From Isurus oxyrinchus (taxonomy: Eukaryota): a stretch of DNA of 64,000 nucleotides. Made by a program: the position numbers and the translations under genes. Position 1 is the first letter of the stretch; every line of letters starts with the position of its first letter. Shown in pieces: positions 8,879-56,903 of the stretch. Below the pieces are notes generated by a model, which worked only from the letters and a program-made list of their open reading frames with translations, was not told the DNA's origin and did not search any database. Location of the stretch: contig JANJGN010000052.1 of NCBI GenBank assembly GCA_026770705.1, positions 3,162,001 to 3,226,000 on the forward strand. Reading direction: 5' to 3'.

Positions 8879-9127
8879 TCAGTTTTGCTTGAATCTGATC
8901 TGTGCGTATTCTGTCTCCTCTTCCCTGTGGACAGTCCCATCACCACTGGGCACCCTGAAGACTTGGGGATTGGCGTAGAGAAGGTCGCCGGGTTTGTTGT
9001 GATTCCAATGTCCAGCATCGCCTCCCACTGGACCTTCAGAGAGATCCCGGGGAGCTGGGGTCTCCCCCTCACTAGTTGTGTCTCTGGTTGTGTTCCGGGC
9101 CTCAGTAATCAGCACGTTCTGTTTACC
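8879..9127 (-). CDS. Gene B terminal cytoplasmic exon with LLYANP and ITSM TEYAQI
   Basis: ccctgtag acceptor, phase 0; GKQNVLITE...DLLYANPQVF...EEETEYAQIRFKQN*. Confidence 0.88.
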   Translation of the reverse strand, partial: GKQNVLITEARNTTRDTTSEGETPAPRDLSEGPVGGDAGHWNHNKPGDLLYANPQVFRVPSGDGTVHREEETEYAQIRFKQN

Positions 9128-12100
9128 CTACAGGGAAATGGAAACAGAAGACATCCTCACATCATTTACTGGCACTGATAGGGTTAAATTATTGTGCAGC
9201 CGCGTTAGGGTCAGTCGTGTCTCAGTTGGTTTAACTCTGTCTCTCATATCATATAAAAGAAACCACCTATGACAGGGCAGCACTCCCTCAGTACTGACCC
9301 TCCAACAGTGCAGCACTCCCTCAGGACTGACCCTCTGTCAGTCTCGCACTCCCTCGGTAATGTCTCTGGCGAGTGCCGGCTTGGATTCTGCACTCAGGTG
9401 CCTGGTGTGAGGCTCATTAACATGAACCTTGTAATCAGAGAGAGGATGAGAGGGAAGAGAAAGAGAGAAAGAGAGAGATAGGGTGTTATTAATCTATTAA
9501 TGTATGTAATGTAAGTGGAAATTGTCATTTTAAACAGGGGTTTAGTCTGTGGGTGTGTCTGTGAGAGTTTTAATTGGATTAAAGCCAGCCAGTCTGGGTA
9601 CTTTGATGTCAAGTAGTTTTGAGATGTAAACAAAGAGGTAAAGGGGTAATTTGCATTTTTAAACAGAGCACTCAATGTCTGAAAGTGAAACCTTAAACGA
9701 ATCAATGTTTATATTACTAATAATATTGATACGATGAAGGGTGGAGTTCAAAGGTCCTGATGATTCAATGAGAATTTACATTCAAAGAGAAGAGCTGGGT
9801 ATAACTTGAGCAGTTTTGTGTGTGCAGAGCAGAGGCTTGTAACATCAAAGCAGCTGTAAGCCTTCACCTGTCTGCAAAGGAACCAAAGTGAAAGGAACCT
9901 CATTTGGAATTTGTGAGGTGAAAATGCTTTGCTTGGAATCTGCTTAAAGTCTATGGGTTGTCTTAGAGGAGATTAGTTTGGGAATTTGTTAAAAAGTTAT
10001 GATAATACTAGTGTTTAGCCATGTGCATATGTTTAACTTGTGTAAATTAATAAATGTCTCATGTAGATTGATATAAAACCATCTCGAGAACTGGTGGTCT
10101 TATTCCTGAATTTAGAGCTGCATCTCAAACATTCCACTGGGAAATATAGGTTATGACAGTTGTTTAAAGTTTCCCTCTGGGATTTTAAACAGTAGCCTTT
10201 ACCAGTTGCTGTGTCATAACAGAGAGACAGCATGATACTGAACCATTGCTGACTCCACAGGTACAAATCAGTGGGTAACTGGGCTGGGAATCTGGGACAT
10301 GTGTTGTCTACACACTGAGATTGAAGCTTTGGAGTGAGTGTAAACAGCTCCTGTACCTGGTGTTTCACAGAGAGTGGACTGGGGGTCAATGCAATGTCAC
10401 TGGTCCCTGAAACTCTCTCCTCCATCGCTGTCTTTCTCCTGCAATAACACAATATCACACTGTGGTTATCATATAGCAGAGAGTCAGTGCAGCACAGACA
10501 CAGAGCCCACTGTAACCTTACACCAACGACTGGACTGTCTGTTTAAATCACTTCTGCACAAAGCACAGAATCTAGAAGCTTGACACCATCCAGAACAAAC
10601 CAGCCCGATTGATCAACACCCCATCCACCCCATTAAACATTCACTCCCTCCACCACGAACACACAGTGGCAGCAGTGTGTGTACCATCTACAAGATGCAC
10701 TGCAGCAACTCAGCAAGGCTCCTTCGACAGCACCTTCCAAACCCACGACCTCTACCATCTAGAAGGACAAGGGCAGCAGACACATGGGAACACCACCACC
10801 TGGAAGTTCCCCTCCAAGTCACTCACCATCCTGACTTGGAAATATATCACCGTTCCTTCACTGTCGCTGGGTCAAAATCCTGGAACTCCCTCTCTAACAG
10901 CACTGTGGGTGTACCTACACCACATGGACTGCAGCGGGTCAAGAAGGCAGCTCACCACCACCTTCTCAAGGGGCAATTAGAGATGGGCAATTTAATAACG
11001 GCCTCACCAGTGACAGTCACATTCGATGAAAGAATTTAAAATCTCACAGCTCAGGAGGAAGCCACTCAGCCCATCGTGCCTGTGCTGGCCCTTTGTAAAA
11101 ACTGTCCAATTAGTCCTAAGCAAATGTTTATATTAAAATCAAGTTAAATCTTCAGACTTACTTTCTCACACAGATGAAGATGAAGATTCCAGCCAGGAAA
11201 ACACTCAACATGATCCCAGCCGTGAGCAATCCTACTGTCCATTTACTGGAGTCTCTACCTGTAAAAACAGCCATTAATTACTGCACTACAGGTTTACAAT
11301 GATGCTCCGATGTATCTCGAGAAGCGATACACTCACTCAGTGTTTAAATACTCATTCTCGGGCAATGCTGACAGTTATTGTCCATCCCTAGTTTCCCCTT
11401 GAGAAGGTGGTGGGGGGTCTTCCTCCTGAGCCACTGGCTTGTCCCAAACTGGGAGACCAGTTCAGAGGGCAGGTCAGAGTTAACCATGTTGGTGTTTGAG
11501 ACTGGAGTCACATATACACCCAGACGTGTTAAAATGGACAGGTTTCCCTCCCTTAAGATCATTAGTGACCCATATTATATATGTAATTTCTATATATATG
11601 TATCAAATAACCTCACTAAAATAATAAATTATCACCTCAATTTCACGCTGTTGTTTGTGGGATCTTGCTGTGTACAAATCAACTGTTGCGTTTCCTACAT
11701 GACAACAGTGAGCTCACTTCGAAACTGCTTCATTGGTTATCGAGCGTTTTGGCAATTTCTAAGCATTTTATCAACACAAGTCTTGCATTTCGATGTAATC
11801 AATCTAACATTTATATATAATATTTATCAATGTGATCCCTATAACATTAATGTATAATATTTAGCAATGTAATCTATGTAACATTTATATATAATGTTTC
11901 TCGATGTAATCTATGTAATATTTATATATAATATTTAGTCGTTTGGGAGGAGAACCTGAGTATTGCTGAGAAAGGACATTTTGTCAAAGCTTTCTGTCTT
12001 GCACCCAATGAAGCAGCTTATCTGGGGGAGAGGGTTCCAGATTTCCACTCCCCTTTGTGTGAAGAAGTGCTTCCTGACATCACCCCCTGAACGGCCTGGC

Positions 12101-15100
12101 TCCAATTTGACCAAGTGTTGCCATTGTCACATGAGGTCAGGTGATTCAAAGCTTGGTCAAAGGGGTAAGTTGTACACAGCATCTTAGAGGAGGTAGAGAG
12201 AGAGGTGGAGAGGTTGAGGGAGGGAATTCTCGAGTTTAGGGATCAATCCAGCTGAGTGGAGATCGATCCTGAGCGATTCTGTCACCTTTGACCCACAGAT
12301 ACACCTTGAACATGGCTTCCCCATGTGGGTTTTGAACTGAGCAGGATGCCATCACTCCCCCCTCATCCTGGGGTCTCATCAGGGTGAGGGAACCAGTCAC
12401 CAGATGCCCATCTCTGACCTGCCACGACACAAAACCTCCGTGTGTTTGGTTACCACTGATGTTTGCACTGGGCAGGTGCCAGGTGAGGTCTCCCGGTGGG
12501 TTGGATTCAGCCACACAGACACAGGTGACCCCCTCTGACCTCTGAGTGCACTCCGATTGCTGGGAAATCTCCGGCTTATCTGAGGAGGGAAGGACAACAA
12601 TGAGACAACGTCTTGGCAAAGTTAGAGCGTAAGATAGAATCTTCACACTGAAACATTCATTCCTGCCTTTGTTACCTCCGCACTCGACTATCCCAACACT
12701 CTCCTGCCCGACCTCCCATCTTCCACTCTCCATAAACATCAGCTCATCCCAAACTCTGCTGTCTCCATGTCCTAACTCACACCGAGTCCCGTTCACACAT
12801 CACTCCCTGTTGGTCACTGAGCTACACTGGCTCCCGGTCCGACAATGACACAATTTTAAAGTTAACATCGTTTCAAATCCCTCCTTACCCCCTCCCTATC
12901 TCTGTAACCTCCTCCAGCCCCTATAACCCTCCCTATCTCTGTAACCTCCTCCAGCCCCTACAACCCTCCGAGATCTCTGTGCTCCTCCAATTCCGGCCTC
13001 TTGACCATCCCCCGATTACTATCGCTCCACCATTGGCGGCCGTGCCTTCAGCTGCCTGGGCCCCGAGCTCTGGAATTCCCTCCGTAAACCTCTCCATTTC
13101 TATCTCTCTCCTCATTTCAGACACTCCTTAAAATCCGGCCTCTTTCTCTGAGCTTTCAGTCCCTGTTCTAACATCTCCTTCTGTATCTCGGAGAGGCGCA
13201 GGGTGAAAAAAGCAGGGAGGTGATGCTAGTTATGCTAAACCACAGCAAGGAAGCTGCCCTCAGACAGAAAGTGTTTGAGTTTTAAGCAGAGACAGGGGGA
13301 GTAAAATGCTTACATTGTACGTTCAGGTGGGTGATGTTGGAGGTGCTGTTACCCACCGGGTTCCTCGCTGTGCAGTAGAAACCTGCATCATTCTCCCGTG
13401 TTACAGGAGTGAAGGAGAGAGTGCGGCTACTTGTGTTTAACTGGGTGCTGGTGTTCCCCTCGATCCTGAACCAGGTGTAATGAGATATCGGTGGGACACT
13501 TTCACTGGAGCAGGTTAATGTGATATTGCTTCCCTCTCTTATCCCACCTGAGGATCTGCTGATGGACACCATCGTCTCCTGTGGGGGATCTGGAACAAAG
13601 ACAGAGAACAATCAGCAGGTAATCCCCACACCCCACAGCTCTCCGAAATCTCTGTGCTCCTCCAATTCCGACCCCTTGCACATTCTCCCATTCCCATCTC
13701 TCCACCATTGGCGGCCGTGGCTTCAGCTGAGAAACCCTCCAGTCCAGTCACTAGTGCGGAGTTCAGATCCCCTCCCACATTCTTTCTCTGGGACATCGAT
13801 GACTGTTTCGATGCTGCTTCATGCTCAGTCTGCACCTGGGAAGATTTATCTATTTTGCTTCCAAGTTTCCCCCCTCCATCATTCTCACAGGGTCCATCTC
13901 TGACACTTCCCTTCCCTTCCTTGATCTCCCTGTCTCAACTTCTGGTGATAGACTGTCCACCAATATCCATTACAAGCCCACTAACCCCCACACAGACCTC
14001 GAATTCAGCTCCTCACACCCCGCTTCCTGTAAGGACTCCATCCCATTCTCTCAGTTCCTTCGCCTCTGTCGTATCAGATCCGATGATGCCACTTTCCAAA
14101 ACAGCCCTTCTGACATGTCCTGCGTCTTCATTAACCAAGGTTTCACACCCATGGTGGGTGAGGGGGCCCTGAACCATGTCTGGCCCATCTCCCATGCATC
14201 CGCCCTCACACCTTCCTCTCCCTCCCTGAACCATGATGAGGTCCCCCTTGTCCTCACTTATCACCCCACCAGCTTCTGCATTCAAAGGATCATCCTCCGC
14301 CATTTCCGTCAACTCCAGCATGATGCCACCACCAAACACATCTTCCTTTCACCGCCCACTGTTGGCAATCCATAGGGATCGTTCTCTCCAGGACACCATG
14401 GTCCATTCCTCCATCACCCTCAACACCTCAACCTCCACCCATGGCATCTTCTCATGCAATTACAGAAGGTGCAACACCTGCCCCTTTACTTCCCCCCTTC
14501 TCACCGTCCAAGGGCCCAAACACTCCTTCCAGGTGAAACAGCATTTAACTTGCACTTCCCTCAATTTGTTCTACTGCATTCGCTGCTCCCAATGCGGTTT
14601 CCTCTACATTGGAGACACCAAACGGAGATTGGGTGACAGCTTTGCAGAAGACCTTTGGTCTGTCCACAAGCATGACCCAGACCTCCCTGTCACTTGCCAT
14701 TTTAACCCTCCACCCTGCTCTCATGCCCACATGTCCGTCCTTGGCCTGCTGCATTGTTCCAGTGAAGCCCAACACAAACTGGAGGAACAGCACCTCATCT
14801 TCCGACCTGGCACTTTACAGCCTTCCGGTCTGAATATTGAGTTCAACAATTTCTGGTCATGAACTCTCTCCTCGATCTTCACTGCTTTTTGAACCCTTTT
14901 TTATGTATTCATTTTAATTGTTTTATTTGTTAACTGTTTTCCACTTATTTTTATTATTATTATTTGAAATTCATTTCCATTTTTATTGATTGTTTTATAC
15001 GCAGATTTTAGTCTATTTTCGATCTTTATTCCCTCCACTGTCTCCTCCCCCTGCCACACCCCCACGAGGGCCATCTGTCTCTTTCCAGAGTGCTTACCCT

Positions 15101-18100
15101 GGTCCGCCCATTATCACACTCTGCTTAATGTCACCATTAGCACCTCCTTTATCCAATACCACCACTGTTAACAACCCTTTGACCTTTTGTTTATGACACC
15201 TTCCACAATCTCTCCATTGCCTCCACCTATCGCTGGTTTTCTATCCAGCTCCACCTGTCCCATCGCCCCCCCTTAGACAGGATATATTTCACCACATGTC
15301 TACTTCCCTTTAGCTCTGAAGAGGAGTCTTACGGACTCCAAACGCTAACCCTGTCTTTCTCTCCACAGATGCTGCCAGATGCTCAGAATCAGCTGGATGG
15401 ACAGAAAGACCAATGAGTGACTTAGATCAAGAGGAGACGTTCAGCAATTAAAAGGGTTGTTCAGGACAGTTAGAGAGAGAAAGGTCGTCAAGTACGGAGA
15501 TTGGAAACGAAGACCTGACAGCCTTGTCCTCACAACCATTGAAGGAGAAACTGAGAGCAAAAACAGAAAGGGAGAGGAAAAATTGGGTGTGTGGATAACG
15601 TGGACTGAGCGAGGATTGAAGAAAACTGGATTAAAAACAACACGATCCCAATGGCTCCACGGAGACCACGGAGACAACAAACAAACAAATGTATCTCCAC
15701 ACTCACATTCCACAGTGATGGTTATGAACCCCTCCACTGCTCCATGTTCATTCTCTGCCACACACTGATAGTCTCCAGTGTCCCTGGATGTAACGTGAGG
15801 AATCACCAACCACAGCTCATTGTTGGAACTTGTTCTGTTCATTGGGACATTAAGATGTCGCCACGTCAGGTTAGAAGCTGGGAAGCTCTCGACAGAGCAG
15901 ATTATCACTGCAGAATTCCCCTCAATTATGTTGATGGATGAAGCGTTAATCATATCAAGAGAATTAATTGATAGGTTCCGTGGTGCATCTAAATACAAAT
16001 AAAGGTTTCATTGTGAGCAAACACAGTGCACAGCAAGACTCCAGGTATCATCTCTCTCCATCTGGTGTCTATGTGCATGTCAAGGCTTCTTTCCCCATTA
16101 TGATTTTCTATGTCACCATTTGTAACAGACACTGCCAGTGTGTTCCTTTTTGCATATTCATGGGAAGTGGATGTATCTATCTAGACCAGCATTTATTACC
16201 CATCCCTAATTGCCCTTGAGGAGGTGGTGGTGAGTTTTTCACCCCCACAGAATTGCCAGCCTCTGACCGGCTCCTGTAGCCACAGTATTTATGGCCGGTC
16301 CAGTTCGGTGTTTGGTTAACATCCCCCAGGATGTTGATCGTGGGGGATTCAGCGATGGGAAAGTGATTGAATATCAAGGGGAGATGGTTAGATTCTCTCT
16401 TGTTGGACATGATCACTGCCTGGTGCTTGTGTGGTGTGAACATTACTTGTCATTTCTCAGCCCAAGCTGAGTGTTGTTCAGCTCTTGCTGCGTGTGGATA
16501 TGTAAACTGTCACGCTGTAATTACAGCCTTCCACCAGAGGAGACACTTTTGGGCTAGAAGAAAAGAAAGTGTCTTTCACATGATCAGGATGTTCACGGAG
16601 ATTTCACCATGGAGGAATTGCTTTGGAATAATGGGGTATTGGGTGATAAACCTACAATTCACTGTTCAGGAGGTTGCTCCATCCAATTCAGTGTCTTGAT
16701 GATCTGCAGTTTACCTTCCTTCAACACAGAATCAGAGCTGCTACCGAGACTCGAGTGCAGCACTGAGAGAGGNNNNNNNNNNNNNNNNNNNNNNNNNNNN
16801 NNNNNNNNNNNNNNNNNNNNNNNNNNNNNNNNNNNNNNNNNNNNNNNNNNNNNNNNNNNNNNNNNNNNNNNNNNNNNNNNNNNNNNNNNNNNNNNNNNNN
16901 NNNNNNNNNNNNNNNNNNNNNNNNTCACATTCCACAGTGATGTTTATGAATCCCTCCACTGCTCCATGTTCATTCTCTGCCACACACTGATAGTTTCCAG
17001 TGTCCTTGGATGTAACGTGAGGAATCACCAGCCACAGCTCATCGTTGGAACTTGTTCTGATCAGTGGGACATTAAGATGTCGCCACGTCAGGTTAGAAGC
17101 TGGGAAGCTCTCGACAGAGCAGATTATCACTGCAGAATTCCCCTCAATTATATTGATCCATGAAGCGTTAATCATATCAAGAGAATTGATTGAGAGATTC
17201 CGTGGTGCATCTAAAAACATATAAAGATTTTAACGTGAGCAAACATAGTGCACAGCAAGACTCCATGCATCATGTCTCTGTATCTGATGTCTGTATGCAT
17301 TTCCAGGTACCTTCCCTCAAGATATTTTCCTATGTCACATTTACAATGGGCACTGCCTATGTAAACTGTCACACTGCAGGAGCATTCTCCCACCAGAGAC
17401 CCTGCCCATCCAGATTTAAAGAAACTCCCTTTCACATCCTCAGAATGTCCCCAAGGGCTTGACAGGCAATGATTGTATTTGATCGATGGAGCACTGAGGG
17501 GTAAATCTACAATTCTCTGTTCAGGAGGTTGCTCATCCAATTCAGGGTCTTGTTGATCTGGAGTTTACCTTCCTTCAGCACAGAATCGGAGCTGACACCG
17601 AGACTCCAGTGCAGCACTGANNNNNNNNNNNNNNNNNNNNNNNNNNNNNNNNNNNNNNNNNNNNNNNNNNNNNNNNNNNNNNNNNNNNNNNNNNNNNNNN
17701 NNNNNNNNNNNNNNNNNNNNNNNNNNNNNNNNNNNNNNNNNNNNNNNNNNNNNNNNNNNNNNNNNNNNNNNNNNNNNNNNNNNNGTGTGTTGTGTATGTG
17801 TGCGTGTGCATGTGAATGTGCGTGCTTACGTGTGTGTGTGTATGCGTGTGTGTGTGTGTGTGCGTGTGTGTGCATGTGCGTGTGTGCAGGTGTGTGTGTG
17901 TTGTGTGTGCGTGTGTGTTGTCTGTGTGCGCGTGTGCGTGTGNNNNNNNNNNNNNNNNNNNNNNNNNNNNNNNNNNNNNNNNNNNNNNNNNNNNNNNNNN
18001 NNNNNNNNNNNNNNNNNNNNNNNNNNNNNNNNNNNNNNNNNNNNNNNNNNNNNNNNNNNNNNNNNNNNNNNNNNNNNNNNNNNNNNNNNNNNNNNNNNNN

Positions 18101-21100
18101 NNNNNNNNCATGTGTGTGTGTGTCTGTTGGTGCGTGTGTGGTCTGTGTAACCTGTAAACCTAACCCTTCCACACTGATGGTCACGAACACCCCCCACTGC
18201 CAACAAATTTATCTCAGTAAGGAACATGGCACTGCCAACCCCGTCAATACCATCTTCTAAACGGGGGATTGGGTAGGAATCTGGTTTTATTGCTGCATTA
18301 ACCTTTCTGTAATGTATGCAGAATCTGGTTGGAAATGAAATACCTGCTCCTTTTTACCTCCCTCCCTACGATGGTATCGTTTTAACATATTGATGTGTCA
18401 CAGCCGATTCTTTATTCTACAATCTGGGGTGTCTATCAAATAATTTACTTGACCAACCCTCCTAATTACCTTGTGGGGACCACTGAACCACGCTTTCAGA
18501 GGCTCCCCCTGCCAAGGCAATGATACTAACACGTCATCCCCCTGGTTGTGATGTTCGGGTCACAGCTTGCCTGTCTGCCCCATTCCTTCATTTCTGTTTG
18601 AGAAACTATAAGATGTTCTTGTGCCACTTTGGAGGCTCCTATGAGCCGTTCCTGAAACATGGACACATCATCTGAAATAGAGGATTCATCCCTCTGTCCG
18701 GAATATCTTTCTTTGATGTATTTCAGACAGCCTCTTATCTCGTGTCCATAAGTTATTCCAAAAAGACTAAAACCTGCCGATTCATTTGGTGAATCTCGTG
18801 TGGGAAATACAAGAAAATCCAGTCCTTTGTCCCAGTCATGGGGAGTTCATGACAATAGCTTCAATCATTGTTTTGAGGGTTTGTTGGTCCCTCTCTAAAG
18901 ATCCCCGTGTCTATGGATGATATGCTGTGGACTTTAACTGTTTTATACCCAAATTACTCATTATGTTCGGAAAATTTTAAGACATAGAGATGGAACCTTG
19001 ATCTGACTGGATCTCCAGCAGTAATCCATAATGGGTAAAAAATTGGGTTAACTTCCCTATTACTACTTTAGCTGTAATTGTTCCTAAAGGGATGGTCTCT
19101 GGAAATCGATTTGTCATATCCATCATAGTGAGGCCATACTGGAGTCCGGCTTTCATTTTCGATAATGGTCTAACACAGTTCACTAATGCTCGTATCCAAT
19201 GGTAACGGACAATTAGCTCACTGGAGGAGGGGAATCCACAAATATCCCCATCCTCAATGAAGGGGGAGCCCAGCACATCAGGGCAAAAGATAAGGCTGAA
19301 GCATTTGCTACAACAATTATCCATTTCTGTCTGGCGTAAAAATAAGTCAGGAAATGGTGCTCAACCAGGGCTTACAAAAGAAATTAGGGATAGTATTAGA
19401 TCCAGAGAGGAGACATAAAATTGCCAGGGGAAGCAGCAATGCTGAGGATTGGGAGCAGTTTAGAATTCAGCAAAAGTGGACAAAAAGATTGATCAAGAAG
19501 GGGAAAATGGAACATGGGAGTAAACTTGCAGGGAACGTAAAAACCGACTGTAAAAGCTTCTATAAATATGTGAAGAGAGGAAGATTAGCAGTGACCGATG
19601 TAGGTTCCTTGCAGTCAGAAATGGGGGAAATTCTAATGAGAAAAAAAGAAATGGCAGAAGAACTGAACATATATTTTGGTTCTGTCTTCACAAAAGAGGA
19701 CACAAATAATTTCCCAGGAATGTTAGGGAACCAAGTGTCTAGTGAGAGGGAGGAATTGAAGATAATCAGGATTAGTTTTAAAAAATGAATCTGGAGAGAT
19801 TAATGGGTTAAAGGTTGAACAGTCCCCAGGGCCTGAAAATCTACATCCCAGAGACTAACGGAAGTGACCCTGGAAATATTGGAAGCACTGGTGGTCATCC
19901 TCCAAAATTCTATAGGCTCTGGAGCAGTTCCTATAGATTGGAGGGTGGCAATTGTAACCCCACTATTTAAAATAGAAGGGAGAGAAAAAAACTGGGAATT
20001 ACAGATCAGTTAGTCTAACATGGGGAAAACGCTAGAGCCTATTATATAAGGTGTGCTAACGGAACGCTTGGAAAGCATTAATGGGATTAGACAAAGTCAG
20101 CATGGGTTAATGAAAGGAAAATCATGCTTAACTAATCTACTGGAGATTTTGAGGATGTAACTTGTGGAATAGATAAGGGATAACCAGTGGATGTGGTGTT
20201 TTTAGATTTCAAGAAGGCTTTTGATAAGGTCCCACATAAGAGGCTAGTGGGCAACATTAAAGCCCATGGGATTGGGGGTAATTTACTGGCATGGATTGAG
20301 AATTGGTCGACAGACAGGAAACAGAGGGTCAGAATAAATTAGTCTTTATCTGAGTGGCAGGCGGTGACTAGTGGTGTACCACAGGGATCCGTGCTTGGGA
20401 CCTAACTATTCACGATATATTTAAATGACTTGGGTGAGGGAGCCAAGTGCAATATTTCCAGGTTTTCTGATGACACAACGCTGGGTAAGGGTGTGAGCTG
20501 TGAGGAGGATGCAAAGAGGCTTCAAGGCGATTTAGACATGTTGTGTGTGTGGGCAAACACATGGCAGATGATGTGGATGAATGTGACATTGTAGGCTTTG
20601 GTGTGAAAAACAGAAAGGCAGAGTATTATTTAAATGGTGATATAATGGGAAATGTGGATGTACAAAGGGATCTGGGTGTCCTTGTGCACTAGCCAATGAA
20701 AGTAAACAGGCAGGTGCAGCAAGTAATTCGGAAGGCAAATGGTATGTTGGCCTTCATTGCAAGAGGATTTGTGTTCAGGAGTAGGGATGTCTTACTGCAG
20801 TTATACAAGGTCTTGGTGAGACTGCACATGGGATACTACGTGCCGATTTGCTCTCCCTCCCTAAAAAAGGATAGACTTGCTGTCGAGAGAGCGCAGAGAA
20901 GGTTCTCTAGGCTGATACCAGGGGCGGCAGGACTGTCGTATGAGGAGAATTGGTACGACTGGGTCTGTATTCACTAGAGTTTAGAAGAATGAGAGGAGAC
21001 CTGAATAAACGTAAGAAATTCTAACAGAGATAGACAGACTGGATGGAGGGAGGATGCATCCCTTGGTTGGGGAGTCTAAAACCAAGGGCGACAATCTCAG

Positions 21101-35295: not shown

Positions 35296-35442
35296 ACTTA
35301 CCCAGTACCTGTCCGACTGCTCGCCTGGGGAGGAACTGCCCACACGCTCTGCTTGGGCTGAATGACCTCTTCCTGTGCTGCCCCCTCTGTGTGTTTAATT
35401 AGAAAGGGTGGATGTGTCACTGTGAGACAAAATGAGGAAGTG
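35296..35442 (-). promoter_or_regulatory. Gene B putative promoter and non-coding exon 1 with PU.1-like AATGAGGAAGTG
   Basis: Paralogous to the gene A block; intact donor at 35296-35301. Confidence 0.55.
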
Positions 35443-36960: not shown

Positions 36961-37679
36961 CTGAGCATGGTCTGCACTGTCCTAAGTGCATTCTAGGCAC
37001 TGCCCAAGGTTCCGCCTGATGTCCGTGTAACAACAACATCATGTACACGTCGAGAATATTTCTCACTGTGTCGGTGCAGCAAGACAGCTTTGGAATGGCA
37101 CCACCACTGGCAGGAGTGTGCAACTACAATGTGACATGTTTACATGGGAAATTTTTATTATAAAGATGGGCACAGGAATTCATATGATAGAGAATATGTG
37201 ACAACATGAAGTAATGTCTTTGAGCCAAAAATTTGGTTGCAAAATAAGAATTTTAATCTATAAATATCTACAGAAAAGGCTGAGCATTTTAATCACTTGA
37301 GGAAATCAATGTAATTTTATTCATAACCCAAATGCTTCTTACAATCTATCGCAGCATGAAAAAGGTGCAGCATTCAGAAAGCACATTCCAATCAGAGAAC
37401 AGAGTTTAGCAACGTCACATTTCTGTTCATTCCTATTCGACCATGTTGGCTGCACACAGCCAGACAATGCCGTGGTTATGATGTGTCCACACAGCAGGAC
37501 TGGGGAGCACCAGGTATAAGGAAAAGTTTCAGCTTGCTGAGGAGAAGAAGGAGAATCTCTCGTTGCAGGTTTCTCTCCGTACATTAAGAAGCAGGCATGC
37601 CGATGTTTCATTGCACTCTGTCTGCTGATGGGAGTCCGCTTGGAAATTGCTGTTTGTGCTGATGGAAAGAATAAGCTTT

Positions 37680-38280
37680 TCATAAATCGAGGGATTGAGA
37701 ACAAACACAGGGAGGTTATGCTGAACATTTATAAAGCTCTGGTTAGGTCACAACTAGAGTATTGTGTCCAGTTCTGGTCTCCTCACTTTGGGAAGGAAGT
37801 GAGGGTCCTTGAGAGGATGGGGAGGAGATTGAGCAGAATGGGTCCAGGGATGAGGGATTTTAGCTACAAGGTTGGGTTGGAGAAGCTGGGGTTGTTCTCC
37901 TTGGAGCAAAGGAGATTGAGGGGGGATCTGATCGAGGTGTAAGAGATGATGATGGGTTTAGATAAGGCAGACAAAGAGAAGCTGTTGCCATTAGCTGATG
38001 GTACAAGGACTGGGGGACACAGATTGAAGGTTTTGGGCAGAGGGGGGATGTGAGGAGGAACTTTTTTACACAGTGAGTGGTAATGAGCTGGAACTCGCTG
38101 CCTACGAGGATGGTGGAAGTGGAGACGATGAACGATTTCAAAAGGAAATTGGATGGACACTTGAGGGGAAATAAACTTGCAGAGATACGGGGATAGAGAG
38201 GGGGAAATGGGACTGACTGGATTGCTTTACAGAGAGGCAGCATGGACTCAATGGGCTGAATGGGCTCCCACTGTGCTGGA
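37680..38280 (+). mobile_element. CR1 LINE 3' fragment
   Basis: YKALVRSQLEYCVQFWSP..LGLFSLEQRRLRGDLIEV. Confidence 0.85.
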
Positions 38281-38399
38281 ATGCCTCTCTGATACGAAGG
38301 TGATTCTAACCAGGACACTGACCAGTTTCATTACAACTTAACCCAACATCACACGTTATTTGTCCGCACTGACTGACCAGATTGTTGCTGTACAAAGCT

Positions 38400-38539
38400 T
38401 CAAACAGTCTGTCGACTTCCTTTCATTGTTTGTCTCTCCCAGACACAGACTCCAGCGATAGTGATAACCACAGCCACAAGGAATATCACAGCTTGTATTC
38501 CCAGGATCAGGATCACGTGCAGAATCTCTCCTCCACTGT
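38400..38539 (-). CDS. Gene C TM plus short cytoplasmic tail, terminal exon
   Basis: ttctctag acceptor phase 1; YSGGEILHVILILGIQAVIFLVAVVITIAGVCVWERQTMKGSRQTV*; this frame is not in the ORF track. Confidence 0.8.
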
Positions 38540-41500: not shown

Positions 41501-44500
41501 GGAGAATGTGGAACTCGCTCCCACAGGGAGTGGTTGAGGTGAGTAGTAGCAAATTGGGAAGTGAAATTGCTTGAAAATCTGGGAGATGCAAGGGTTAAGT
41601 GCTACCGTGCCACCACTGGTAGGAGAGTGTAACTACAGCGTGATGTTTACATAGGCAATCCCCATGATGAACTGGGACATTGGACATCATGTGCAAAATG
41701 GGCTCTGGAAAGGTGGGAACATGATGTAAGCTTTTCACCAACAGGAATTCCCTTCCTAAACCTCTCCACCTCTCTCTTACTCTCAGATACTCAAACAATA
41801 TTTCACACAGATTCACAGAAGGAGGAGTTGGGACAGATGCCTGGTCAAAGGGTTTGGTTTGAAGAAGATTCTTCAAGGGAGAGAGAGAGTTGGAGAGGCA
41901 ATCAGTATCTGTAAGTATCTCTGTGCATCTGAGTGTCTAATAGAATTTGCAATTTCCATGTTCTTCCAGAAATATGAATGGGAACACAAATCCCAGAATC
42001 TACGTCAACTCTCCGATGCAGCACTGATGGAGGTCAGGTAACCCACGGGGGAGATGTGTTTGAGTGTGTTAGTTTGTGAGTGTGTCATTGTGTGTGCTCA
42101 TACATGTGGGATTGTGTGTCTGCAGGTGTCTATTTAGGTCTGTATATTTGTGTGTGTTTGTGTCATGATTCAATCTGAGAGAGATGTTGAAGTCTGTGTA
42201 CACTCACGTTCCACAGTGATGGTTATGAGCCCATCCACTGGTCCATGTTCATTCTCTGCCACACACTGATAGTCTCCAGTGTCCCCGGATGTAACGTAAG
42301 GAATCACCAACCACAGCTCATTGTTGGAACTTGTTCTGTTCATTGTGATATTCAGATGTCAGGGCAGGACTCAACAGACAGATCGCAGTTTTACCAACAG
42401 AAAGTGAACAACAATTTATACTTGATGGGAAGAGAGTGCTGATTGGTTGGCAAGTGGTCACTGATTGGAGGAGGTGTTGCCATGGAAAATAATGTGTGCG
42501 AGGTGTAAAGTTAAGACAGCTTGTCTCTTCATTCAGCAGTAATCAAATAAAGATCAGTTAATTTCTATCGACTGTGAAGCACTTTGAGAGGAATGAGAAT
42601 GTGGACACTGAGAACAGGCTGCACTGTCAGAGGGTCAGCGCTGAGGGAGTGCTGATGTAGAATGAAGGATATCTCAACTTACATTGCACAGTTAGTACGA
42701 GGGTCTGCTCCGATGAAACAGATGGATATCTCACTCTGCAGCTGAGAGTGTGTCCGTGGTGTTTGAGTGATGGGATCAGGGTCAGAACAGAAGTATAGGT
42801 CAGAGTGACACCATGCTGAGTTACAGTGTTTGAGACTGATCCAGGTACGTCAGTGGGAATGTCCCAGGTTAAGACAGGTGCTGCTGTTCCATTGCACGTT
42901 GTGTTGAAGGTGCAGCTTACATCCACACGCTTTCCTGCAATAATTTCAGCAGGGAATATCGTGGGTTTATCTGTGAAATCTAACAGACAGAGAATGGATC
43001 CTTTTAGAGAAATATAACGTGAAGCATCAGTTCAAATAGAAATCACAGTCCCACAAGAGAAAGCACTTTTACAAGGATGATATCAGAACTGAGAGGTTAC
43101 AACGATCAGGAGAGAATTTCCTGCTTTGAGACTTTGGTGTTTCTGTCTCTCAGCTTAATACACGTTCACTCCGAGACACTTGAACTGATAATAGTGGGTG
43201 AGGGTGGTGGAGCAGACCAGAGTTTGGAGTGCACTACCCCATCAGTCCCTCAGCAATCTGGGCCATTTATTACTTTGCAATTTGTGGGAGATTGCTGTGC
43301 ACAAATTGGCTGCTGTGTTTCCCACTTTACAACAGTAACTACAATTCAGGAATCAGCTCATTGGCTGTGAAGTGATTTGGTCCATGCTGAGATGGTGAAA
43401 TGTGCTATAGAAATGTGAATATTTCTTCTATCGATATGTCAGACTTCGAGACAGGATTAGAGAGATCGGTGCGAGTGGATAACCTGATAACACTGATGGA
43501 CACAGTCAATACATTTAATCATTGATATTAAAGTGAGTATTAGATGTTGCTTTAGGACTGAACTGGAAGCTATCACCAGGTTATTGAGAATCAGACAGTG
43601 TGTTATAATAAGCTGTGTTTTGTGTTAATATGTAAACGGCACAGTTTGTGTTATTTCCCATTGAGTGTTGAATGTGAATTGTTGAGTAATTATAACACAG
43701 CACTTACCAGAAACATGAAGCTGGGTTACAGGATAGTAGCTGTATCTATTTCCGCTGTCAAATTCTATTCTGAAAAAATAAGGTCCTGCATCTCCCCATC
43801 TGATGTTGTTTATAATCAGGGAACAGTCGCCATCTTTCAGGTCTCCAGACAGCCGGGTCCGATGGTGGAAACGTGGTAACTCATGACTGTGATCCTTGGA
43901 GTGAAAGGCTATAGACGATGTTCTCCATTCCTCATTATTAAACCAGACTCCACCTCGCGGTTGGTTTTCCAGACACAATGGATAACTGTAATGACATGGA
44001 ATCTGTACACACGAACCTTTCTGAGCTGTCACCTCTCGTGGAGTGTCACCTTTCCACTCTTGTGAGGGTTCAGCTGGGGAGAGAAATATCAATATTTAAC
44101 TCTGGATGGTTTGTGGATCCACTGAACCCGATATTTACAGATGTGGCTGAATTTGGAGGATGGTCAATACTGAGGAGAATGGCAACAAATTATTTTGGCA
44201 GGAAGAATAGTAAAACAGAATATTATTAAAATGGAGAGAGGCTGCAGAATGCAGTACAGAGGGATCTGGGTGTCCTGGTACATGAATCACAGAAAGTCAG
44301 CATTCAGGAACACCACGGAATGAGGAAGGCAAGTGGAATGTTGGCCTTTATTGCAAAGGGATGGAGTATAAAAGGAGGGAAGTCTTGCAACAGCTGCACA
44401 GGGCGTTGGTGAGATTGTAACAGGATCATTGTGTACAGGCAGTTCAGAGAAACTTCACTGGGCTGATTCCTGGGATTAAAGGGTTTGTCCTGTGAGGAAA

Positions 44501-47500: not shown

Positions 47501-50500
47501 TAAGAATGGAGCCAGGGGAGAGCAGTCCCACCCAGCTGGACGACAGTGGAGAGGTGTTGGAGGAGGATGGTGTGGTCGAGCGGGTCAAAGGCTGCAGACA
47601 GATCGAGAAGGACGAGGAGGGAAAGTTGACCTTTGTCACAGTCACACAGGATGCCATTTGTGACCTTGATAAGAGCTGTTTCAGCACAGTGGCTGGGGTG
47701 GGAACCTGATTGGAGGGATTCAAACATGGAGTTCCGGGAAAGATGGGAACGGATTCGGGAGATGGAAACACGTTCAAGGACTTTGGAGGGGAAAGAGAGG
47801 CTGGAGATGGGACAGGGGTTTACACGGACAGTGTGAGGGGTGGAAGGTGTAGTGGGGAGGAGATACTTCACTCAGCGGGGAGGTGTCATCACCCCTCAGC
47901 TCGGTTTACGTTACAGCTATGATGTGGATTCAATCACACACAATAAGCTCATGGATCTGGGAGCAGAAATAGACAAATCATTAAAAATAGTGACGCTGGT
48001 TAACACGGCCAAAAAACAAGCAAATCAAACACTATTATTTCCCATTGAGTGTTGAATGTGAATTGTTGAGTAATTATAACACAGCACTTACCAGAAACGT
48101 GAAGCTGGGTTACAGGGTAATAGTTATGGCTCGGACCATTGCCAAATTTTATCGTGAAAAAATAAGGTCCTGCATCTTCCCGTCTGATGTTGTTTATAAT
48201 CAGGGAACAGTCACCATCTTTCAGGTCTCCAGACAGCCGGGTCTGATGGTGGAACCGTGGTAACTCGTGACTGTGATCCTTGGAGTGAAAGGCTATAGAC
48301 GATGTATGCCATTTGTCCCTTCTCATTTTCCAGATTCCAACACGTGTTTTCTCTAACAAATGTGATGGGTAATTGTAATTACATGGAATCTGTACACACG
48401 AACCTTTCTGTGCCGTCACCTCTCGTGGAGTGTCACCTTTCCACTCTTGTGACAGTCCAACTGGGGAGAGAAATATCAATATTTAACTCTGGATGGTTTG
48501 TAGATCCACTAGACTCGATATCCACCCCCTCCATCACTGGGGCACAGTGGCTGCAGTGTGGACCATCTACAGGACACACATGGAACTCCCCAATGTTTCA
48601 TAACGGATGGAAGAGAATCCTGGACACAGGAGTGGACAAGTTCATTCTACATTGGCTCATGGTCCTCAGGACCCTGTTTGTGCACAAGCCTGCTATCCAA
48701 CAGAACTGAAGTTGGGGAAAATCCATTTGGAATTCCACTGTCCAGGGCATTGTGTTAACTTGTTGAATTTGTTTTAAATCTAACATATAATTTTGGTCTG
48801 TTGCCTTAAATGGAGTGTAACTGGGAGTCAGGTTAATTAGGAATTTTAGGAGTTATTATAGCAGTCATTGTAGTCTTATGTATGTGCTTGAAATCTTTCA
48901 TTTTGATGACAAATATTTTAATTTATTGTTTTAAATCTCTGAAAGTTTGGTGGAGTCATTGCTTCTGAATTCAGTGCACACATCTCAAAATAAATACAAA
49001 TTGCAAAATCATTATGATAGTGTGACCAGGTTTCTCTCAGGGACTTGGTCTGCCTGGCACACCTCACCTGCCAAGTGATAACACTGTTATAATATGCCTT
49101 TCAGGGATAGCAGCATGACATCACTCGAGGGGAAGTGTGTCATGTGATTTTTAGGAACTGGGGTTGGCTTAAGTAAGTTCTATGTGTATTTCTGTGTGTT
49201 AGGCATAAGGTGTATCTTTAAGTTCAAGTTTAGTTTGTATTTCTGTATTTGGGTGTTGAGAAAAGGGGGAGCTTGAGCTAAAAAGAAGCCAGCATTCCAT
49301 TGAGGTTTTATGTCTCTTGCAGGAAGTCAAAACAAATACAAGGTGTAAGAAACTGTGCTGTTGCCTAGCAACAGTGATCCAGAGGGAAGGACCCACAGAG
49401 ACAGAGAAAAACAGAAAAGTACTTTCAGTTCTGTTGAAAGGAGTTGCCAGGAGAAGCAGCAAAGGAGCGGGACAGATAGTCAGTCCCAAAGTAAAGAAGA
49501 AGCCAAAACCATCGAGTGGAACAGGAGAAAGGGCCCAAGAAAACCTTCTAGTCAAATCTGGAAAAGGCCCTGTTAAGTGAAGTTAAGAGTGAGGAGCAGA
49601 AGAAGGCTTCAAGCTTAAAGGGAGAAAGCAGCAGGACACAGGCCTAAAGCAAAATAGGCTTGTGAGAAGCCAGAAGATCCTAGGAGACACCACAGGTTGG
49701 TGACTCATTACTACGGCCATGTGAAGCCATGGTGTTCCATTGACACGGCTGAGCATTGGAGAGACAGGGCGCGGAAGGAAGGCTGAATGCACGTGGCGAT
49801 CCAGGGGGCAGGAACATGGGAAGGAGAGTTTGAAATAGTGAAAGTGGACCCTTGTGGAAGGTGTCTGAGTGAAAGTGTCATGTTGGAGAAGATTCCAAAG
49901 AGAGCACTTGGCTCTCTTTGAGATTGGAAACCCTCATATGGATATCTCAGTTCAGTGTGACTGGTTGGCTCACAGTGTAACAAGCGTCTGGGGTCAGATG
50001 AGGAGGGAGACATAGCATTTGTTTCAAGTGGGTTCTGTCACTTGATTTTAGAATGTGGTGTCCCTGACCACAGGTCGTCTATTGGTTTACATGGACTGTG
50101 TACTTAGTGTGAACATGATAGTATAAGATAGCTATTGTAACTTGCGTGATCTTTATGAATCTGTATATATCTGTAAATGTATAGGTCTGGGTGAAGGAGA
50201 AATGTCATATAGTTTGTCTTTCCTAGTTTAGTAAATGTTTTATTCTTTAGTTAGAAGTTCATCAGATGACTCCTGTGACTCTGTTCAGTAGCTGCACTCC
50301 TCATTCCTAAATAAAAAATAAAAGTTAGGACCTATCAAGCTGAGCTCCACCCTGGGATCTGACTTGCCCAGTAGTAACATCAGCTGGGATGATAACACCA
50401 TCCAGTCCAAGTTTCACTTTGGCCTGTGAGCAGAACACAGCTCACACACTTTGGCTGCAGGTGTCTCCCAGCTTTCTATCCTTGTATATCTGTTCTCATG

Positions 50501-53500: not shown

Positions 53501-54712
53501 GGAACAACATCCAAGGGTGACAATCCCACAGACCACTGTGAGCAGTTAAAGACACCTCCAGACAAGGTAACCAGCACAAGATCTGGGTGGACCAGAAGGT
53601 TAAATCCACACTTTAGAGAGTCAAATATTCAACAGTTCCATGCACTTATGTAATTGTCAATAAATATGAACATGATATGAGAAACCGCTTGTTCCCTATC
53701 CTTCTCAAAGATCCATTCCTGCAGCGGGAGCCTGAAGTGTTACTGATAAGAGATTTAATTTATCGGATTGTGGAATGATCCGGAACTGAAGGAAGCCATT
53801 TGGCCCATCGAGCCTGTGCTGGGCCTTTGAAAGATCTGTCCAATTAGTGCCACTCTCACCTCTGCTCTCTCCCCCACAGCCCTGCAAAATGTCCCCTTCA
53901 AGTATTTATCCAGTTCCCCTTCTGAAAGTTCCTGTTGAATCTGCTTCCACCGCCCTTTCAGGCAGTGAGTCAATGGTCTCTCTCTGAGCTGCAAAGTGAT
54001 AAGTTTCAATGAAATATAAACTCTGCAGCAGATCAGAAACAATCATGATAACTCAGAATATTTGACAGTTTTACATACAGACAGCTTTGCCTCCCTTCTC
54101 TCTATCAGTTATCTTGCTATCTTATCGAATTTTCTAGCATGGTGAGAATGGACAGGAAGTGTGACGCTGAACTGCCTGTCTAATCTAAGAGCTTCTGTGT
54201 TGTCTTCATGGGAAATTCTGATGAAAATCAGCAAGAGAGAAAAATTTCAGGGCATTGATATCGGAGTGCTTGCATCAGGATAGACTTCATCCCCCAGTTT
54301 TTATCCCTGCTTCTCTATTCAGCCGATCGCTCCCCTGTCACTCACTGACCTACACTGGCTCCCAGTCCAGCAATGCCTCAATTTTCAAAATCTCTTCATT
54401 GATTCCTTATCCCTCCATTCTCCATCTCTAATCCCTATCACTGTCACCTCCTCCAGCCCTGAAACCCTTTGAGGTCTCTGCTGTCCTGCAGTTCTGCTGT
54501 CAGACAGGGAGTCAGTGTATATCAGTGAGCACAGGGGTGATGGGTGAATGGGACGTGGTGTGAGTTTGTACACTGACTCACTGCTGAATCAGTTCCCTAT
54601 CAGAGCTCCATAAGAATGTTCTTTTACAAAGACTATTAGCCATAAGTCTGTCCAAGCTGACGATGTTATTACCTTGGAGAAGTGACAGGAGGAAGTAAGA
54701 TTTCCCAACCAT
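38400..54712 (-). CDS. Gene C: Siglec-like receptor SP-V-V-C2-C2-TM-short tail, about 497 aa (alternative signal exon 56864-56903)
   Basis: join(54673-54712,48092-48460,43708-44073,42683-42979,40244-40525,38400-38539); phases compatible, 1494 nt. Confidence 0.75.
40244..40525 (-). CDS. Gene C C2-type Ig exon
   Basis: 282 nt; APRNLSI..IICSVESSPASNLMW..DTGEYQCVAENEHG. Confidence 0.88.
41308..41372. repeat. Fold-back of two Penelope-like termini (25-bp inverted arms)
   Basis: gttgatgtttcgagtcctcatgacc ... ggtcatgaggactcgaaacgtcaac. Confidence 0.75.
42208..42360 (-). pseudogene. 5'-truncated C2 pseudo-exon in gene C
   Basis: Only HLNITMNRTSSNNELWLVIP..DTGDYQCVAENEHG..ITVE remains; in-frame TGA immediately upstream, 5' half and acceptor replaced by unrelated sequence. 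Confidence 0.8.
42683..42979 (-). CDS. Gene C first C2 exon (near-identical to 21749-22045)
   Basis: 297 nt; FTDKPTIFPAEII..VSCTFNTTCNG..TLSCRVRYP. Confidence 0.9.
43708..44073 (-). CDS. Gene C V-set exon 2 (Arg retained, extra Cys)
   Basis: 366 nt; AEPSQEW..YPLCLEN..YFFRIEFDSGNRYSY. Confidence 0.9.
48092..48460 (-). CDS. Gene C V-set exon 1 (N-terminal; Arg replaced by Thr)
   Basis: 369 nt; VGLSQEW..GIWKMRRDKW..YFFTIKFG. Confidence 0.9.
49650..53620 (+). mobile_element. LTR-like repeat plus degenerate Gypsy-like element (PBS-like site about 50589, protease KIDTGASAN, integrase remnants) in gene C intron 1
   Basis: Aspartic protease motif DTGA; HPSHMG..WPGMNNDL, PHYP.SN..AE and QDPHIAMLHLRSTP integrase-like fragments; homologous to the gene B intron 1 insertion. 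Confidence 0.75.
54673..54712 (-). CDS. Gene C proximal signal-peptide exon (MVGKSYFLLSLLQ)
   Basis: 40 nt, G|gtaat donor. Confidence 0.8.
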
Positions 54713-56863: not shown

Positions 56864-56903
56864 CTTGGAGAAGTGACAGGAGGAAGTAATATTTCCTGAT
56901 CAT
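56864..56903 (-). CDS. Extra distal signal-peptide exon (MIRKYYFLLSLLQ) with no V exon of its own
   Basis: Intact ATG and G|gtaat donor; next V exon downstream is 48092-48460. Confidence 0.65.

What the first reader, a model, noticed from the sequence alone, without database searches (positions are those of the whole stretch)
8879..54712. Paired-receptor layout: near-identical ectodomain exons joined to inhibitory-type and activating-type ends
Seen: genes B and C share nearly identical first C2, second C2 and V-framework exons and shared intronic insertions, but have unrelated 3' ends. B has an uncharged TM plus a Tyr-motif tail; C has a single TM/terminal exon with a 12-aa tail and no Tyr. 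Established: mammalian Siglec-5/14 and Siglec-11/16 are paired receptors kept similar by gene conversion. Inference: this is an independently evolved paired Siglec system in a probable cartilaginous fish.
Basis: partly seen in the sequence, partly recalled or inferred. Interest (0 to 1): 0.8.

Follow-up and report, generated by a model that had tools for sequence, protein, structure and literature searches.

The report
Shark Siglec gene pair, different ends
Two neighbouring shark immune-receptor genes of the sialic-acid-lectin (Siglec) family share their outer domains but end differently: one has an inhibitory-type tail, the other a short "activating-type" membrane anchor that in this copy lacks the key charged residue.

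Summary
On the minus strand lie two tandem Siglec-family genes of a lamniform shark; their exons are 91-97.5% identical in protein to great white shark RefSeq models.

- **Gene B** (34851-8879): leader, three V exons, C2-1, at least two C2-2, C2-3, C2-4, an uncharged TM, and a tail with LLYANP and TEYAQI.
- **Gene C** (54712-38400): leader, two V exons, C2-1, C2-2, and one terminal TM exon with a 12-aa tail.
- **Shared parts:** C2-1 is 98.3% identical, C2-2 95%, V exons 89-93%. Frameworks are identical and loops diverged. The same retroelement and minisatellite sit in the introns.

RNA contigs show the terminal exon's acceptor (38539) in use. It joins to a C2-1-type exon end in three runs and to a gene-C-specific half exon in one. 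No 40244-to-38539 joint was listed.

Gene C's terminal exon matches a cassette that closes 14 predicted shark receptors from seven species (Siglec-, CD22- and sialoadhesin-like and one unnamed Ig-domain protein). All 14 carry a TM arginine; gene C reads glutamine (CAA).

So the layout is inhibitory/activating-type, but this copy lacks the defining charge. Gene conversion is suggested, not proven. Automatic annotation already predicts both forms in sharks, and earlier scan findings on other DNA of this genome describe the same cassette and multi-V genes.

The parts
54673..54712 (-). Gene C leader exon (MVGKSYFLLSLLQ + 1 nt, donor GTAATA)
   Evidence: tblastn with the leader of shark homologue P0003; alignment of the four leader copies
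48092..48460 (-). Gene C V exon 1 (VC1), phase 1-1. It reads YFFT: Thr at the sialic-acid arginine position.
43708..44073 (-). Gene C V exon 2 (VC2), phase 1-1, YFFR kept
   Evidence: RNA joint 43708 to 42979, and a V-exon 3' end joined onto 44073.
42683..42979 (-). Gene C C2-1 exon
   Evidence: RNA joints to VC2 and to 38539.
42208..42343 (-). 5'-truncated extra C2-2-like half exon with its donor kept. In one run's contig it is spliced to 38539.
40244..40525 (-). Gene C C2-2 exon, phase 1-1. Homology to B stops at the exon edges.
38400..38539 (-). Gene C terminal exon: TM (…ILILGIQAVIF…), a 12-aa tail and the stop at 38402-38400. The Gln codon CAA is at 38495-38493.
34812..34851 (-). Gene B leader exon (MIGKSYFLLSLLQ + 1 nt)
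30043..30420 (-). Gene B V exon 1 (VB1), YFFT
26417..26785 (-). Gene B V exon 2 (VB2), YFFR
22858..23226 (-). Gene B V exon 3 (VB3), YFFR
21749..22045 (-). Gene B C2-1 exon
16929..17210 (-). Gene B C2-2a exon. Its donor GTGA abuts the assembly gap at 16773-16924.
15707..15988 (-). Gene B C2-2b exon
13314..13589 (-). Gene B C2-3 exon (B only)
12286..12579 (-). Gene B C2-4 exon (B only)
11162..11258 (-). Gene B TM exon, uncharged, phase 1-2
   Evidence: The same exon junctions appear in great white shark models P0020 and P0023.
10357..10438 (-). Gene B cytoplasmic exon, phase 2-0
8879..9127 (-). Gene B tail exon with LLYANP and TEYAQI, then the stop
16773..16924 (.). Assembly gap 1, intronic, 4 nt after the C2-2a donor
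17621..17784 (.). Assembly gap 2, intronic, at the same point of the tandem unit as gap 1, beside (TG)n
17943..18108 (.). Assembly gap 3, inside the (TG)n microsatellite

Best explanation
B and C are tandem duplicates within a large, modular Siglec-family cluster of a lamniform shark.

A duplicated block carries the leader, the V exons, their retroelement-bearing introns and C2-1. It is shared at 86-99.5% identity. The C2-2 exon is shared as an exon-sized patch.

Gene B continues with extra C2 exons, an uncharged TM and a CD33-type tail (hxYAxx … TEYAQI). It is most likely an inhibitory receptor that recruits SH2 phosphatases when the distal tyrosine is phosphorylated (inferred).

Gene C is closed by a one-exon cassette of a TM plus a 12-aa tail. 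Sharks use this cassette to close many Ig-superfamily receptors, and elsewhere it always carries a buried arginine. That is the mark of receptors that signal through a separate ITAM adaptor (inferred from the known rule for DAP12/FcR-gamma-coupled receptors).

In this copy the arginine codon reads CAA (Gln); if the ancestral codon was CGA, this is a single CpG transition. Gene C therefore has an activating-type layout but probably cannot couple in the canonical way. It is best read as an uncoupled or decoy-like variant, or a variant allele, of an activating Siglec-like receptor.

Both genes start with a V domain that has lost the sialic-acid arginine (YFFT). This is followed by V domain(s) that keep it. 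RNA shows V exons spliced to V exons.
For: - Family and exon structure.
- Colinear B/C homology with shared RVT_1 insertions.
- Unrelated 3' ends.
- RNA contigs:
  - Depth in run X1 is 8782 over the terminal exon against about 104 in the intron.
  - A canonical joint links the C2-1 end (42683) to 38539 in X1, X2 and X5.
  - A 674-nt contig in X7 joins 42470-42208 to 38539-38301. This contig is locus-specific.
  - A contig runs straight through the stop codon into the 3'UTR.
  - VC2 is joined to C2-1, and a V-exon 3' end is joined onto 44073.
- Cassette homology: 14 predicted proteins from seven shark species carry the cassette. In 13 it forms the extreme C-terminus (in P0058 the model reads on). 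All have ILGIRA, while the window has ILGIQA.
- B tail and exon junctions match great white shark models P0020 and P0023. P0023 has a canonical LLYTNI at the proximal site.
- Phases are compatible: C2-1 and C2-2 end in phase 1 and the cassette starts in phase 1.
Against: - The junction contigs from C2-1 to 38539 carry G, not the window's T, as the last base of C2-1. They have only 28-30 nt on the shorter side. They may therefore come from an allele or from a near-identical paralogue rather than from gene C itself.
- All X1/X2 contigs differ from the window at 38343.
- The X7 contig has a 1-nt deletion at 38510.
- RNA did not resolve codon 38495-38493, because 75 differences were not displayed. 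Gln rests on the assembly alone.
- No binding, signalling or adaptor data exist.
- B's proximal tyrosine motif is not a canonical ITIM.
- A glutamine in a TM helix can still mediate helix-helix contacts.
Confidence: 0.62

Rival explanations
1. Gene C is a fully working activating partner of B. On this reading the Gln is an assembly error or a minor allele, or it is tolerated, and the receptor couples to an ITAM adaptor.
For: The cassette is otherwise intact and 89-91% identical to Arg-bearing great white shark cassettes. The exon type is highly expressed and correctly spliced. The expressed contigs differ from the window at 38343 and at the junction base, so other alleles or copies exist. If the ancestral codon was CGA, the change to CAA is a single CpG transition and could be polymorphic.
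Against: The window reads CAA, while Arg is invariant in 14 of 14 homologous cassettes across seven species. That argues the charge is required. No read evidence for Arg at this locus was obtained.
Confidence: 0.2
2. Gene C is a decaying partial duplicate. On this reading, the transcripts that contain the cassette come from Arg-bearing paralogues elsewhere in the cluster, and the locus in this window makes no functional protein.
For: The junction base is G rather than the window's T, and there is a fixed difference at 38343 in X1/X2. The ligand-side arm of the junction contigs is short. A truncated half exon (42343-42208) lies inside the gene. The X7 contig has a 1-nt deletion at 38510. The key Arg is lost.
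Against: All of C's exons have open frames and intact splice sites. An X1 contig is identical to the window over 310 nt across the intron/exon border 38531-38840. The X7 contig joins gene-C-specific sequence (42470-42344) to the cassette.
Confidence: 0.12
3. The likeness of B and C is actively maintained by recurrent gene conversion, as in Siglec-5/14, so that both keep the same ligand specificity.
For: Identity is a mosaic. There is a 127-bp identical tract in C2-1 inside a block that is 86% identical (permutation P<0.001). C2-2 is shared as an exon-sized patch (95%) with unrelated introns on both sides. dS is 0.04 in C2-1 against 0.1-0.3 over whole V exons and up to about 1.1 in the F-G segment.
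Against: The ligand-binding loops are the most different parts. The C-C' and F-G segments have high dN and high dS. Any exchange therefore shuffles old segment types and does not homogenise the binding face. VC2 is closer to gene A's V (94.2%) than to B's (89.5%). Introns are often more alike than exons, as expected from a recent duplication.
Confidence: 0.25

Closest known systems
Human Siglec-5 / Siglec-14 and Siglec-11 / Siglec-16 paired receptors
   Same: Adjacent Siglec genes with similar N-terminal Ig exons. One has a tyrosine-motif tail, the other a short tail and an adaptor-type TM. Identity along the genes is patchy (own knowledge; reviewed in PMC13358205 and PMC4042635).
   Different: The shark V domains are only 85-88% identical and differ in the specificity loops. 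Each gene carries several V exons. The short-tail end is a shark-wide cassette shared with non-Siglec receptors. In this copy the basic TM residue is Gln. No mammalian protein was among the cassette hits at E<=0.001, which fits an independent origin.
RefSeq predicted great white shark (Carcharodon carcharias) Siglec-like proteins: P0010/P0011/P0014 (Arg cassette) and P0020/P0023 (ITIM-type tail)
   Same: They use the same exon types and the same exon junctions and are 91-97.5% identical per exon. Both end types exist in one species.
   Different: None is identical to the window's genes. All cassette models carry Arg. P0023 has a canonical proximal ITIM (LLYTNI) where gene B has LLYANP.
CD33-related Siglec cytoplasmic tail (proximal ITIM plus distal TEYSEI/V-like motif)
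   Same: B has two tyrosines 22 residues apart. The distal one is TEYAQI. The exon layout of one TM exon plus two cytoplasmic exons is the same (the comparison is from own knowledge).
   Different: The proximal motif has Pro at +3 and reads as YxN, which is Grb2-type rather than ITIM. Orthology to the mammalian CD33-related group was not tested.
PILR-alpha/beta and other Ig-superfamily paired receptors (PIR-A/B, KIR, LILR, teleost NITR)
   Same: Linked genes with a similar ectodomain and either an ITIM tail or a short tail with a TM basic residue (PMC13358205, PMC2213385).
   Different: These are different Ig families. Here the activating module is a single shuffled terminal exon, reused by several receptor families.

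Membership tests
Siglec family (sialic-acid-binding Ig-like lectins) | An N-terminal V-set domain of Siglec type, followed by C2-set domains | tested here: met
   Pfam V-set plus Ig_CD22 (E 1e-7 to 1e-12) and C2-set_2. The best PDB matches are Siglec-5, CD33, sialoadhesin, Siglec-8/-7/-10 and MAG (E 1e-13 to 1e-10).
Siglec family (sialic-acid-binding Ig-like lectins) | A conserved F-strand arginine that binds the sialic-acid carboxylate | tested here: met
   YFFR of VC2 aligns with YFFR of Siglec-5. It is also kept in VB2, VB3 and VA. It is not kept in the first V exon of either gene (VB1 and VC1 read YFFT).
Siglec family (sialic-acid-binding Ig-like lectins) | The Siglec cysteine pattern: CxxxPC and CSL in the V domain, with an extra Cys in the first C2 domain | tested here: met
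   CVQIPC aligns with CVLVPC of Siglec-5. GDCSL is in every V exon. C2-1 has three Cys.
Siglec family (sialic-acid-binding Ig-like lectins) | Actual binding of sialylated glycans | not testable with these tools
   This needs Fc-chimera or glycan-array work.
Paired inhibitory/activating receptor pair | Closely linked genes with highly similar ligand-binding ectodomains | tested here: inconclusive
   The genes are adjacent. C2-1 is 98.3% and C2-2 95% identical, but the V domains are 85-88% identical in protein, with the differences in the C-C' and F-G loops.
Paired inhibitory/activating receptor pair | The inhibitory member has an ITIM, (I/V/L/S)xYxx(L/V/I) | tested here: inconclusive
   LLYANP fails at +3. 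TEYAQI fits the ITSM TxYxx(V/I), like the distal motif of CD33-related Siglecs. Paralogue P0023 has LLYTNI.
Paired inhibitory/activating receptor pair | The activating member has a short tail without signalling motifs | tested here: met
   A 12-aa tail with no Tyr, a stop at 38402-38400, and an RNA contig that runs continuously through the stop.
Paired inhibitory/activating receptor pair | The activating member has a basic residue (Lys/Arg) in the TM for adaptor pairing | tested here: not met
   Gene C reads ILILGIQAVIF. All 14 homologous cassettes read ILGIRA.
Paired inhibitory/activating receptor pair | Opposite signalling through a phosphatase and through an ITAM adaptor | not testable with these tools
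   This needs biochemical or reporter assays. The shark adaptor is unknown. A 2014 survey found no FcR-gamma in shark genomes (PMC4016189).
Shark tail-less TM-Arg terminal cassette | A homologous one-exon TM plus short tail at the extreme C-terminus | tested here: met
   phmmer E 7e-13 to 3e-5; all seven real hits end with the cassette. It is 89-91% identical to great white shark copies.

The most novel reading that the evidence does not exclude
Sharks build Siglec-like receptors from interchangeable exon modules:
- tandem V-exon arrays, with and without the sialic-acid arginine;
- amplifiable C2 exons;
- three alternative 3' modules: an ITIM/ITSM tail, a YxN-rich tail, and a universal TM-Arg cassette shared with CD22-like, sialoadhesin-like and other Ig receptors.

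Gene C would then be a naturally uncoupled (Arg to Gln) member. It would keep the ectodomain on the cell surface as a decoy, a third state beside inhibitory and activating partners. The cassette itself implies an ITAM adaptor in sharks that has not yet been identified.
Probability: 0.3. Interest if true: 0.6.

Novelty: new member of a known kind. Interest (0 to 1): 0.45.

Why it matters
Paired inhibitory/activating receptors are a recurring outcome of host-pathogen conflict. Siglec pairs are so far described in mammals. Four full-text searches of the paper library found no description of Siglec pairs in cartilaginous fish.

This locus shows the same layout arising in sharks by a different route, through a shuffled terminal TM cassette. 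It sits inside a cluster with multi-V genes.

It also offers a natural Arg-to-Gln variant with which to test whether the TM charge is needed. And it points to an unidentified shark ITAM adaptor.

The gain is moderate. The principle is known, and automatic annotation already predicts both receptor forms in several sharks.

Tried and rejected
- **Leader search by ORF scan.** Scanning for ATG plus a hydrophobic stretch plus a phase-1 donor upstream of the V exons gave no convincing leader. The leaders were found only with a homologue's leader peptide.
- **Remnants of the other gene's 3' end.** I searched for remnants of C's cassette in B and of B's C2-3, C2-4, TM and tail exons in C, with blastn (word 7) and tblastx. 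None was found. The only extra B-type TM copy is at 62474-62570, in gene D.
- **Cassette as a chance ORF or exonised repeat.** Rejected. It closes 14 predicted receptors, and its acceptor is used in RNA.
- **Reading the Arg/Gln codon from RNA.** Not possible. Table 3 lists nothing at 38494, but 75 differences were not shown, including all five differences of the X7 contig inside the exon.
- **The search of earlier findings by sequence.** Blank, which carries no meaning.
- **Literature.** Four searches found no paper on shark Siglec pairs or on the shark adaptor question beyond PMC4016189.
- **Spliced models.** All protein searches were done exon by exon or with database proteins.


Full report
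**Layout of the region.** The 64-kb window has three N runs, at 16773-16924, 17621-17784 and 17943-18108. All receptor exons lie on the minus strand. Pfam finds Siglec-type V-set domains (V-set plus Ig_CD22) in six exons. It finds C2-set_2 in two exons and Ig_3/I-set in the others. A V exon searched alone against the PDB gives Siglec-5, CD33, sialoadhesin, Siglec-8, -7, -10 and MAG (E 1e-13 to 1e-10). The CxxxPC motif and the YFFR arginine are aligned.

**Exon maps (minus strand).**
- **Gene C:** leader 54712-54673, VC1 48460-48092, VC2 44073-43708, C2-1 42979-42683, a truncated C2-2-like half exon 42343-42208, C2-2 40525-40244, and terminal exon 38539-38400.
- **Gene B:** leader 34851-34812, VB1 30420-30043, VB2 26785-26417, VB3 23226-22858, C2-1 22045-21749, C2-2a 17210-16929, C2-2b 15988-15707, C2-3 13589-13314, C2-4 12579-12286, TM 11258-11162, cytoplasmic exon 10438-10357, and tail 9127-8879.
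- Every Ig exon is phase 1-1 with intact AG/GT. The TM, cytoplasmic and tail exons of B run in phases 1-2, 2-0 and 0-stop. C's terminal exon starts in phase 1.

**Assembly gaps (tested first, as asked).** Gap 1 starts 4 nt after the donor of C2-2a, and the GTGA is kept. The 120 nt to the left of gaps 1 and 2 are 91% identical to each other. Gaps 2 and 3 are flanked by (TG)n. The gaps therefore sit at the same intronic point of a ~1.2 kb tandem unit that carries the C2-2 exon. No reading frame crosses a gap. Because the exon is phase 1-1, any copy number stays in frame. The number of C2-2 copies in B is not known.

**The observation.** B and C are colinear from the leader block down to the C2-1 donor, at 72-99.5% identity in 200-bp windows. 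After that, only the C2-2 exon itself is alike, and its introns are at background identity.
- C2-1 differs at 5 of 294 nt (dN 0.009, dS 0.04).
- C2-2 is 95.0% and 92.5% identical to B's two copies.
- VB1/VC1 are 93.4% identical and VB2/VC2 89.5%, which is 84.8% and 87.7% in protein.
- The introns after VB1, VB2 and VC1 hold the same reverse-transcriptase fragment (Pfam RVT_1) and the same minisatellite.
- The 3' ends share nothing.
- B's TM is uncharged. Its tail has LLYANP and TEYAQI, 22 residues apart.
- C's last exon encodes a TM, the 12 residues ERQTMKGSRQTV and a stop.

**Is C's terminal exon real?** RNA-type runs were found, and four were laid on 38300-44200. All are Logan contigs, so the results show presence and joints only.
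- In X1 the exon bin has depth 8782 against about 104 in the intron. This behaves as RNA.
- A joint with canonical GT..AG on the minus strand links the C2-1 end (42683) to 38539 in X1, X2 and X5.
- In X7, one 674-nt contig links 42470-42208 to 38539-38301. That is the truncated half exon, with its unique upstream sequence, joined to the terminal exon.
- A contig runs through the stop codon into the 3'UTR.
- Further joints show VC2 (43708) spliced to C2-1 (42979), a V-exon 3' end spliced onto 44073 (V to V), and C2-2 ends spliced to C2-2 starts.

Caveats on this RNA evidence:
- No 40244-to-38539 joint is among those listed, and 9 joints were not shown.
- The junction contigs carry G where the window has T at 42683, and their shorter arm is 28-30 nt. 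They may stem from an allele or a close paralogue.
- X1 and X2 differ from the window at 38343.
- The X7 contig lacks one base at 38510.
The acceptor and the exon are used, but the partner exon seen is C2-1 or the half exon, not C2-2.
- In homologues, both C2-1-to-cassette junctions (P0001, P0010, P0014) and C2-2-to-cassette junctions (P0002, P0003) are modelled.

**What the terminal exon is.** The 45-residue peptide was searched alone against 1.84 billion representatives. It gave seven real hits, all ending exactly with this module. The sources name them CD33-like, Siglec-12, Siglec-13, CD22-like, sialoadhesin-like and one unnamed Ig-domain protein. The species are Scyliorhinus torazame, Chiloscyllium punctatum, Hemiscyllium ocellatum and Rhincodon typus. 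A word search with P0001 added copies from Carcharodon carcharias, Scyliorhinus canicula and Chiloscyllium plagiosum.

In all 14 cassettes the TM reads ILGIRA, while the window reads ILGIQA. The module is thus a shared, tail-less, TM-arginine cassette. By the established rule for DAP12/FcR-gamma-coupled receptors, that marks an activating type. Gene C's copy lacks the charge (CAA). If the ancestral codon was CGA, this is a single CpG transition; that step is inference, because I have no DNA of the homologues. Whether transcripts carry Gln could not be read, since 75 differences were not displayed.

**Species and gene B.** Great white shark RefSeq models match the window's exons at 91-97.5%, and none at 100%. 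The window is therefore from that species or a close lamniform relative. Models P0020 and P0023 reproduce B's TM, cytoplasmic and tail exon junctions. P0023 has a canonical ITIM (LLYTNI) where B and P0020 have LLYANP, and all three keep TEYAQI. B's tail is therefore of the CD33-related type, with one ITSM/ITIM-like site and one YxN-like site. An inhibitory function is inferred, not shown.

**Evolution.** Mismatches are not evenly spread. There are identical tracts of 122-127 bp in blocks that are 86-91% identical (P<0.001). Within the V exons, both dN and dS are high in the C-C' and F-G segments, with dS up to 1.1, and low in the frameworks. VC2 is nearest to gene A's V, at 94.2%. This looks like exchange of old segment types among many V exons on top of a recent tandem duplication. 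It does not look like homogenisation of one pair's binding face. The 'pair' is best seen at the level of the cluster.

**Literature.** Four full-text searches found no description of Siglec pairs in cartilaginous fish. The concept and the mammalian cases are reviewed in PMC13358205. A 2014 survey found no FcR-gamma in shark genomes (PMC4016189), so the adaptor for the cassette is open.

**Earlier scan notes.** Notes on other DNA of this genome describe the same TM-Arg cassette and multi-V genes. I used them as leads and re-tested them here.

**Verdict.** This is a real, expressed-type, shark Siglec-family gene pair with inhibitory-type and activating-type ends. The activating-type copy in this window has Gln for the essential Arg. 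It is a new member of a known kind and of moderate interest.

Noticed in passing
window 30043-30420 and 48092-48460 (-): The first V exon of both B and C reads YFFT (ACG) where the other four V exons read YFFR. The membrane-distal V domain of both genes has therefore lost the canonical sialic-acid arginine, while the following V domain(s) keep it. The great white shark homologue of this V type (P0010, FFRIKF) keeps Arg.
   Followed up: partly
window 44073/44074 and 42979/42980 (loose ends): RNA contigs show a V-exon 3' end (…TTCACGTTTCT) joined both to the start of V exon VC2 and to the start of C2-1. Tandem V-V splicing therefore occurs, giving multi-V receptors. Which V exons are joined cannot be told from 31-mer contigs.
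   Followed up: partly
window 62474-62570, 61636-61728, 61014-61124, 59697-59810, 63830-64000 (-): This is the 3' part of a further gene, D. It has a C2-2 exon cut by the window end and a B-like TM exon that is 96% identical to great white shark P0024. Relative to B, the TM exon has a 1-nt deletion that puts a stop just before the TM. Cytoplasmic exons of a third, YxN-rich tail type follow (VYENC, LYANC, VYGNL).
   Followed up: partly
window 4902-4994, 35302-35379, 55163-55243, 57347-57427 (-): A relic of the D-type first cytoplasmic exon (GSSTGRGHSAQAERV…) lies about 450 bp upstream of every leader exon (A, B, C and the spare leader). The tandem duplication unit therefore began inside the tail region of a D-type gene.
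   Followed up: partly
window 56864-56903 (-): A fourth, spare leader exon (MIRKYYFLLSLLQ, donor kept) lies 2.2 kb upstream of gene C's leader, with no V exon of its own between them. It may be an alternative first exon or an orphan.
   Followed up: no
window 34873-34862 and 56925-56914 (-): The B leader and the spare leader have an upstream, out-of-frame ATG (ATGAAATAT…). RefSeq models P0020 and P0023 use it as their start (MKYLGVDNDREI…). Those N-termini are probably mispredicted, or the ATG acts as a small upstream ORF.
   Followed up: no
window 59906-60964: A 24-bp tandem repeat of about 44 copies, 92-94% alike, is open in two frames (INNQTPFS…). It lies between gene D's cytoplasmic exons and is probably an intronic minisatellite.
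   Followed up: no
window 39567-40396 vs 41546-42360: A local tandem duplication (79% identity) covers the 3' half of the C2-2 exon plus about 680 bp of the downstream intron. It created the half exon whose donor is used in one run's contig.
   Followed up: partly
window 38510 (table 4): The organism-B contig that joins the half exon to the terminal exon lacks one base at 38510, inside the coding part of the cassette. That copy may be frameshifted in that organism.
   Followed up: no
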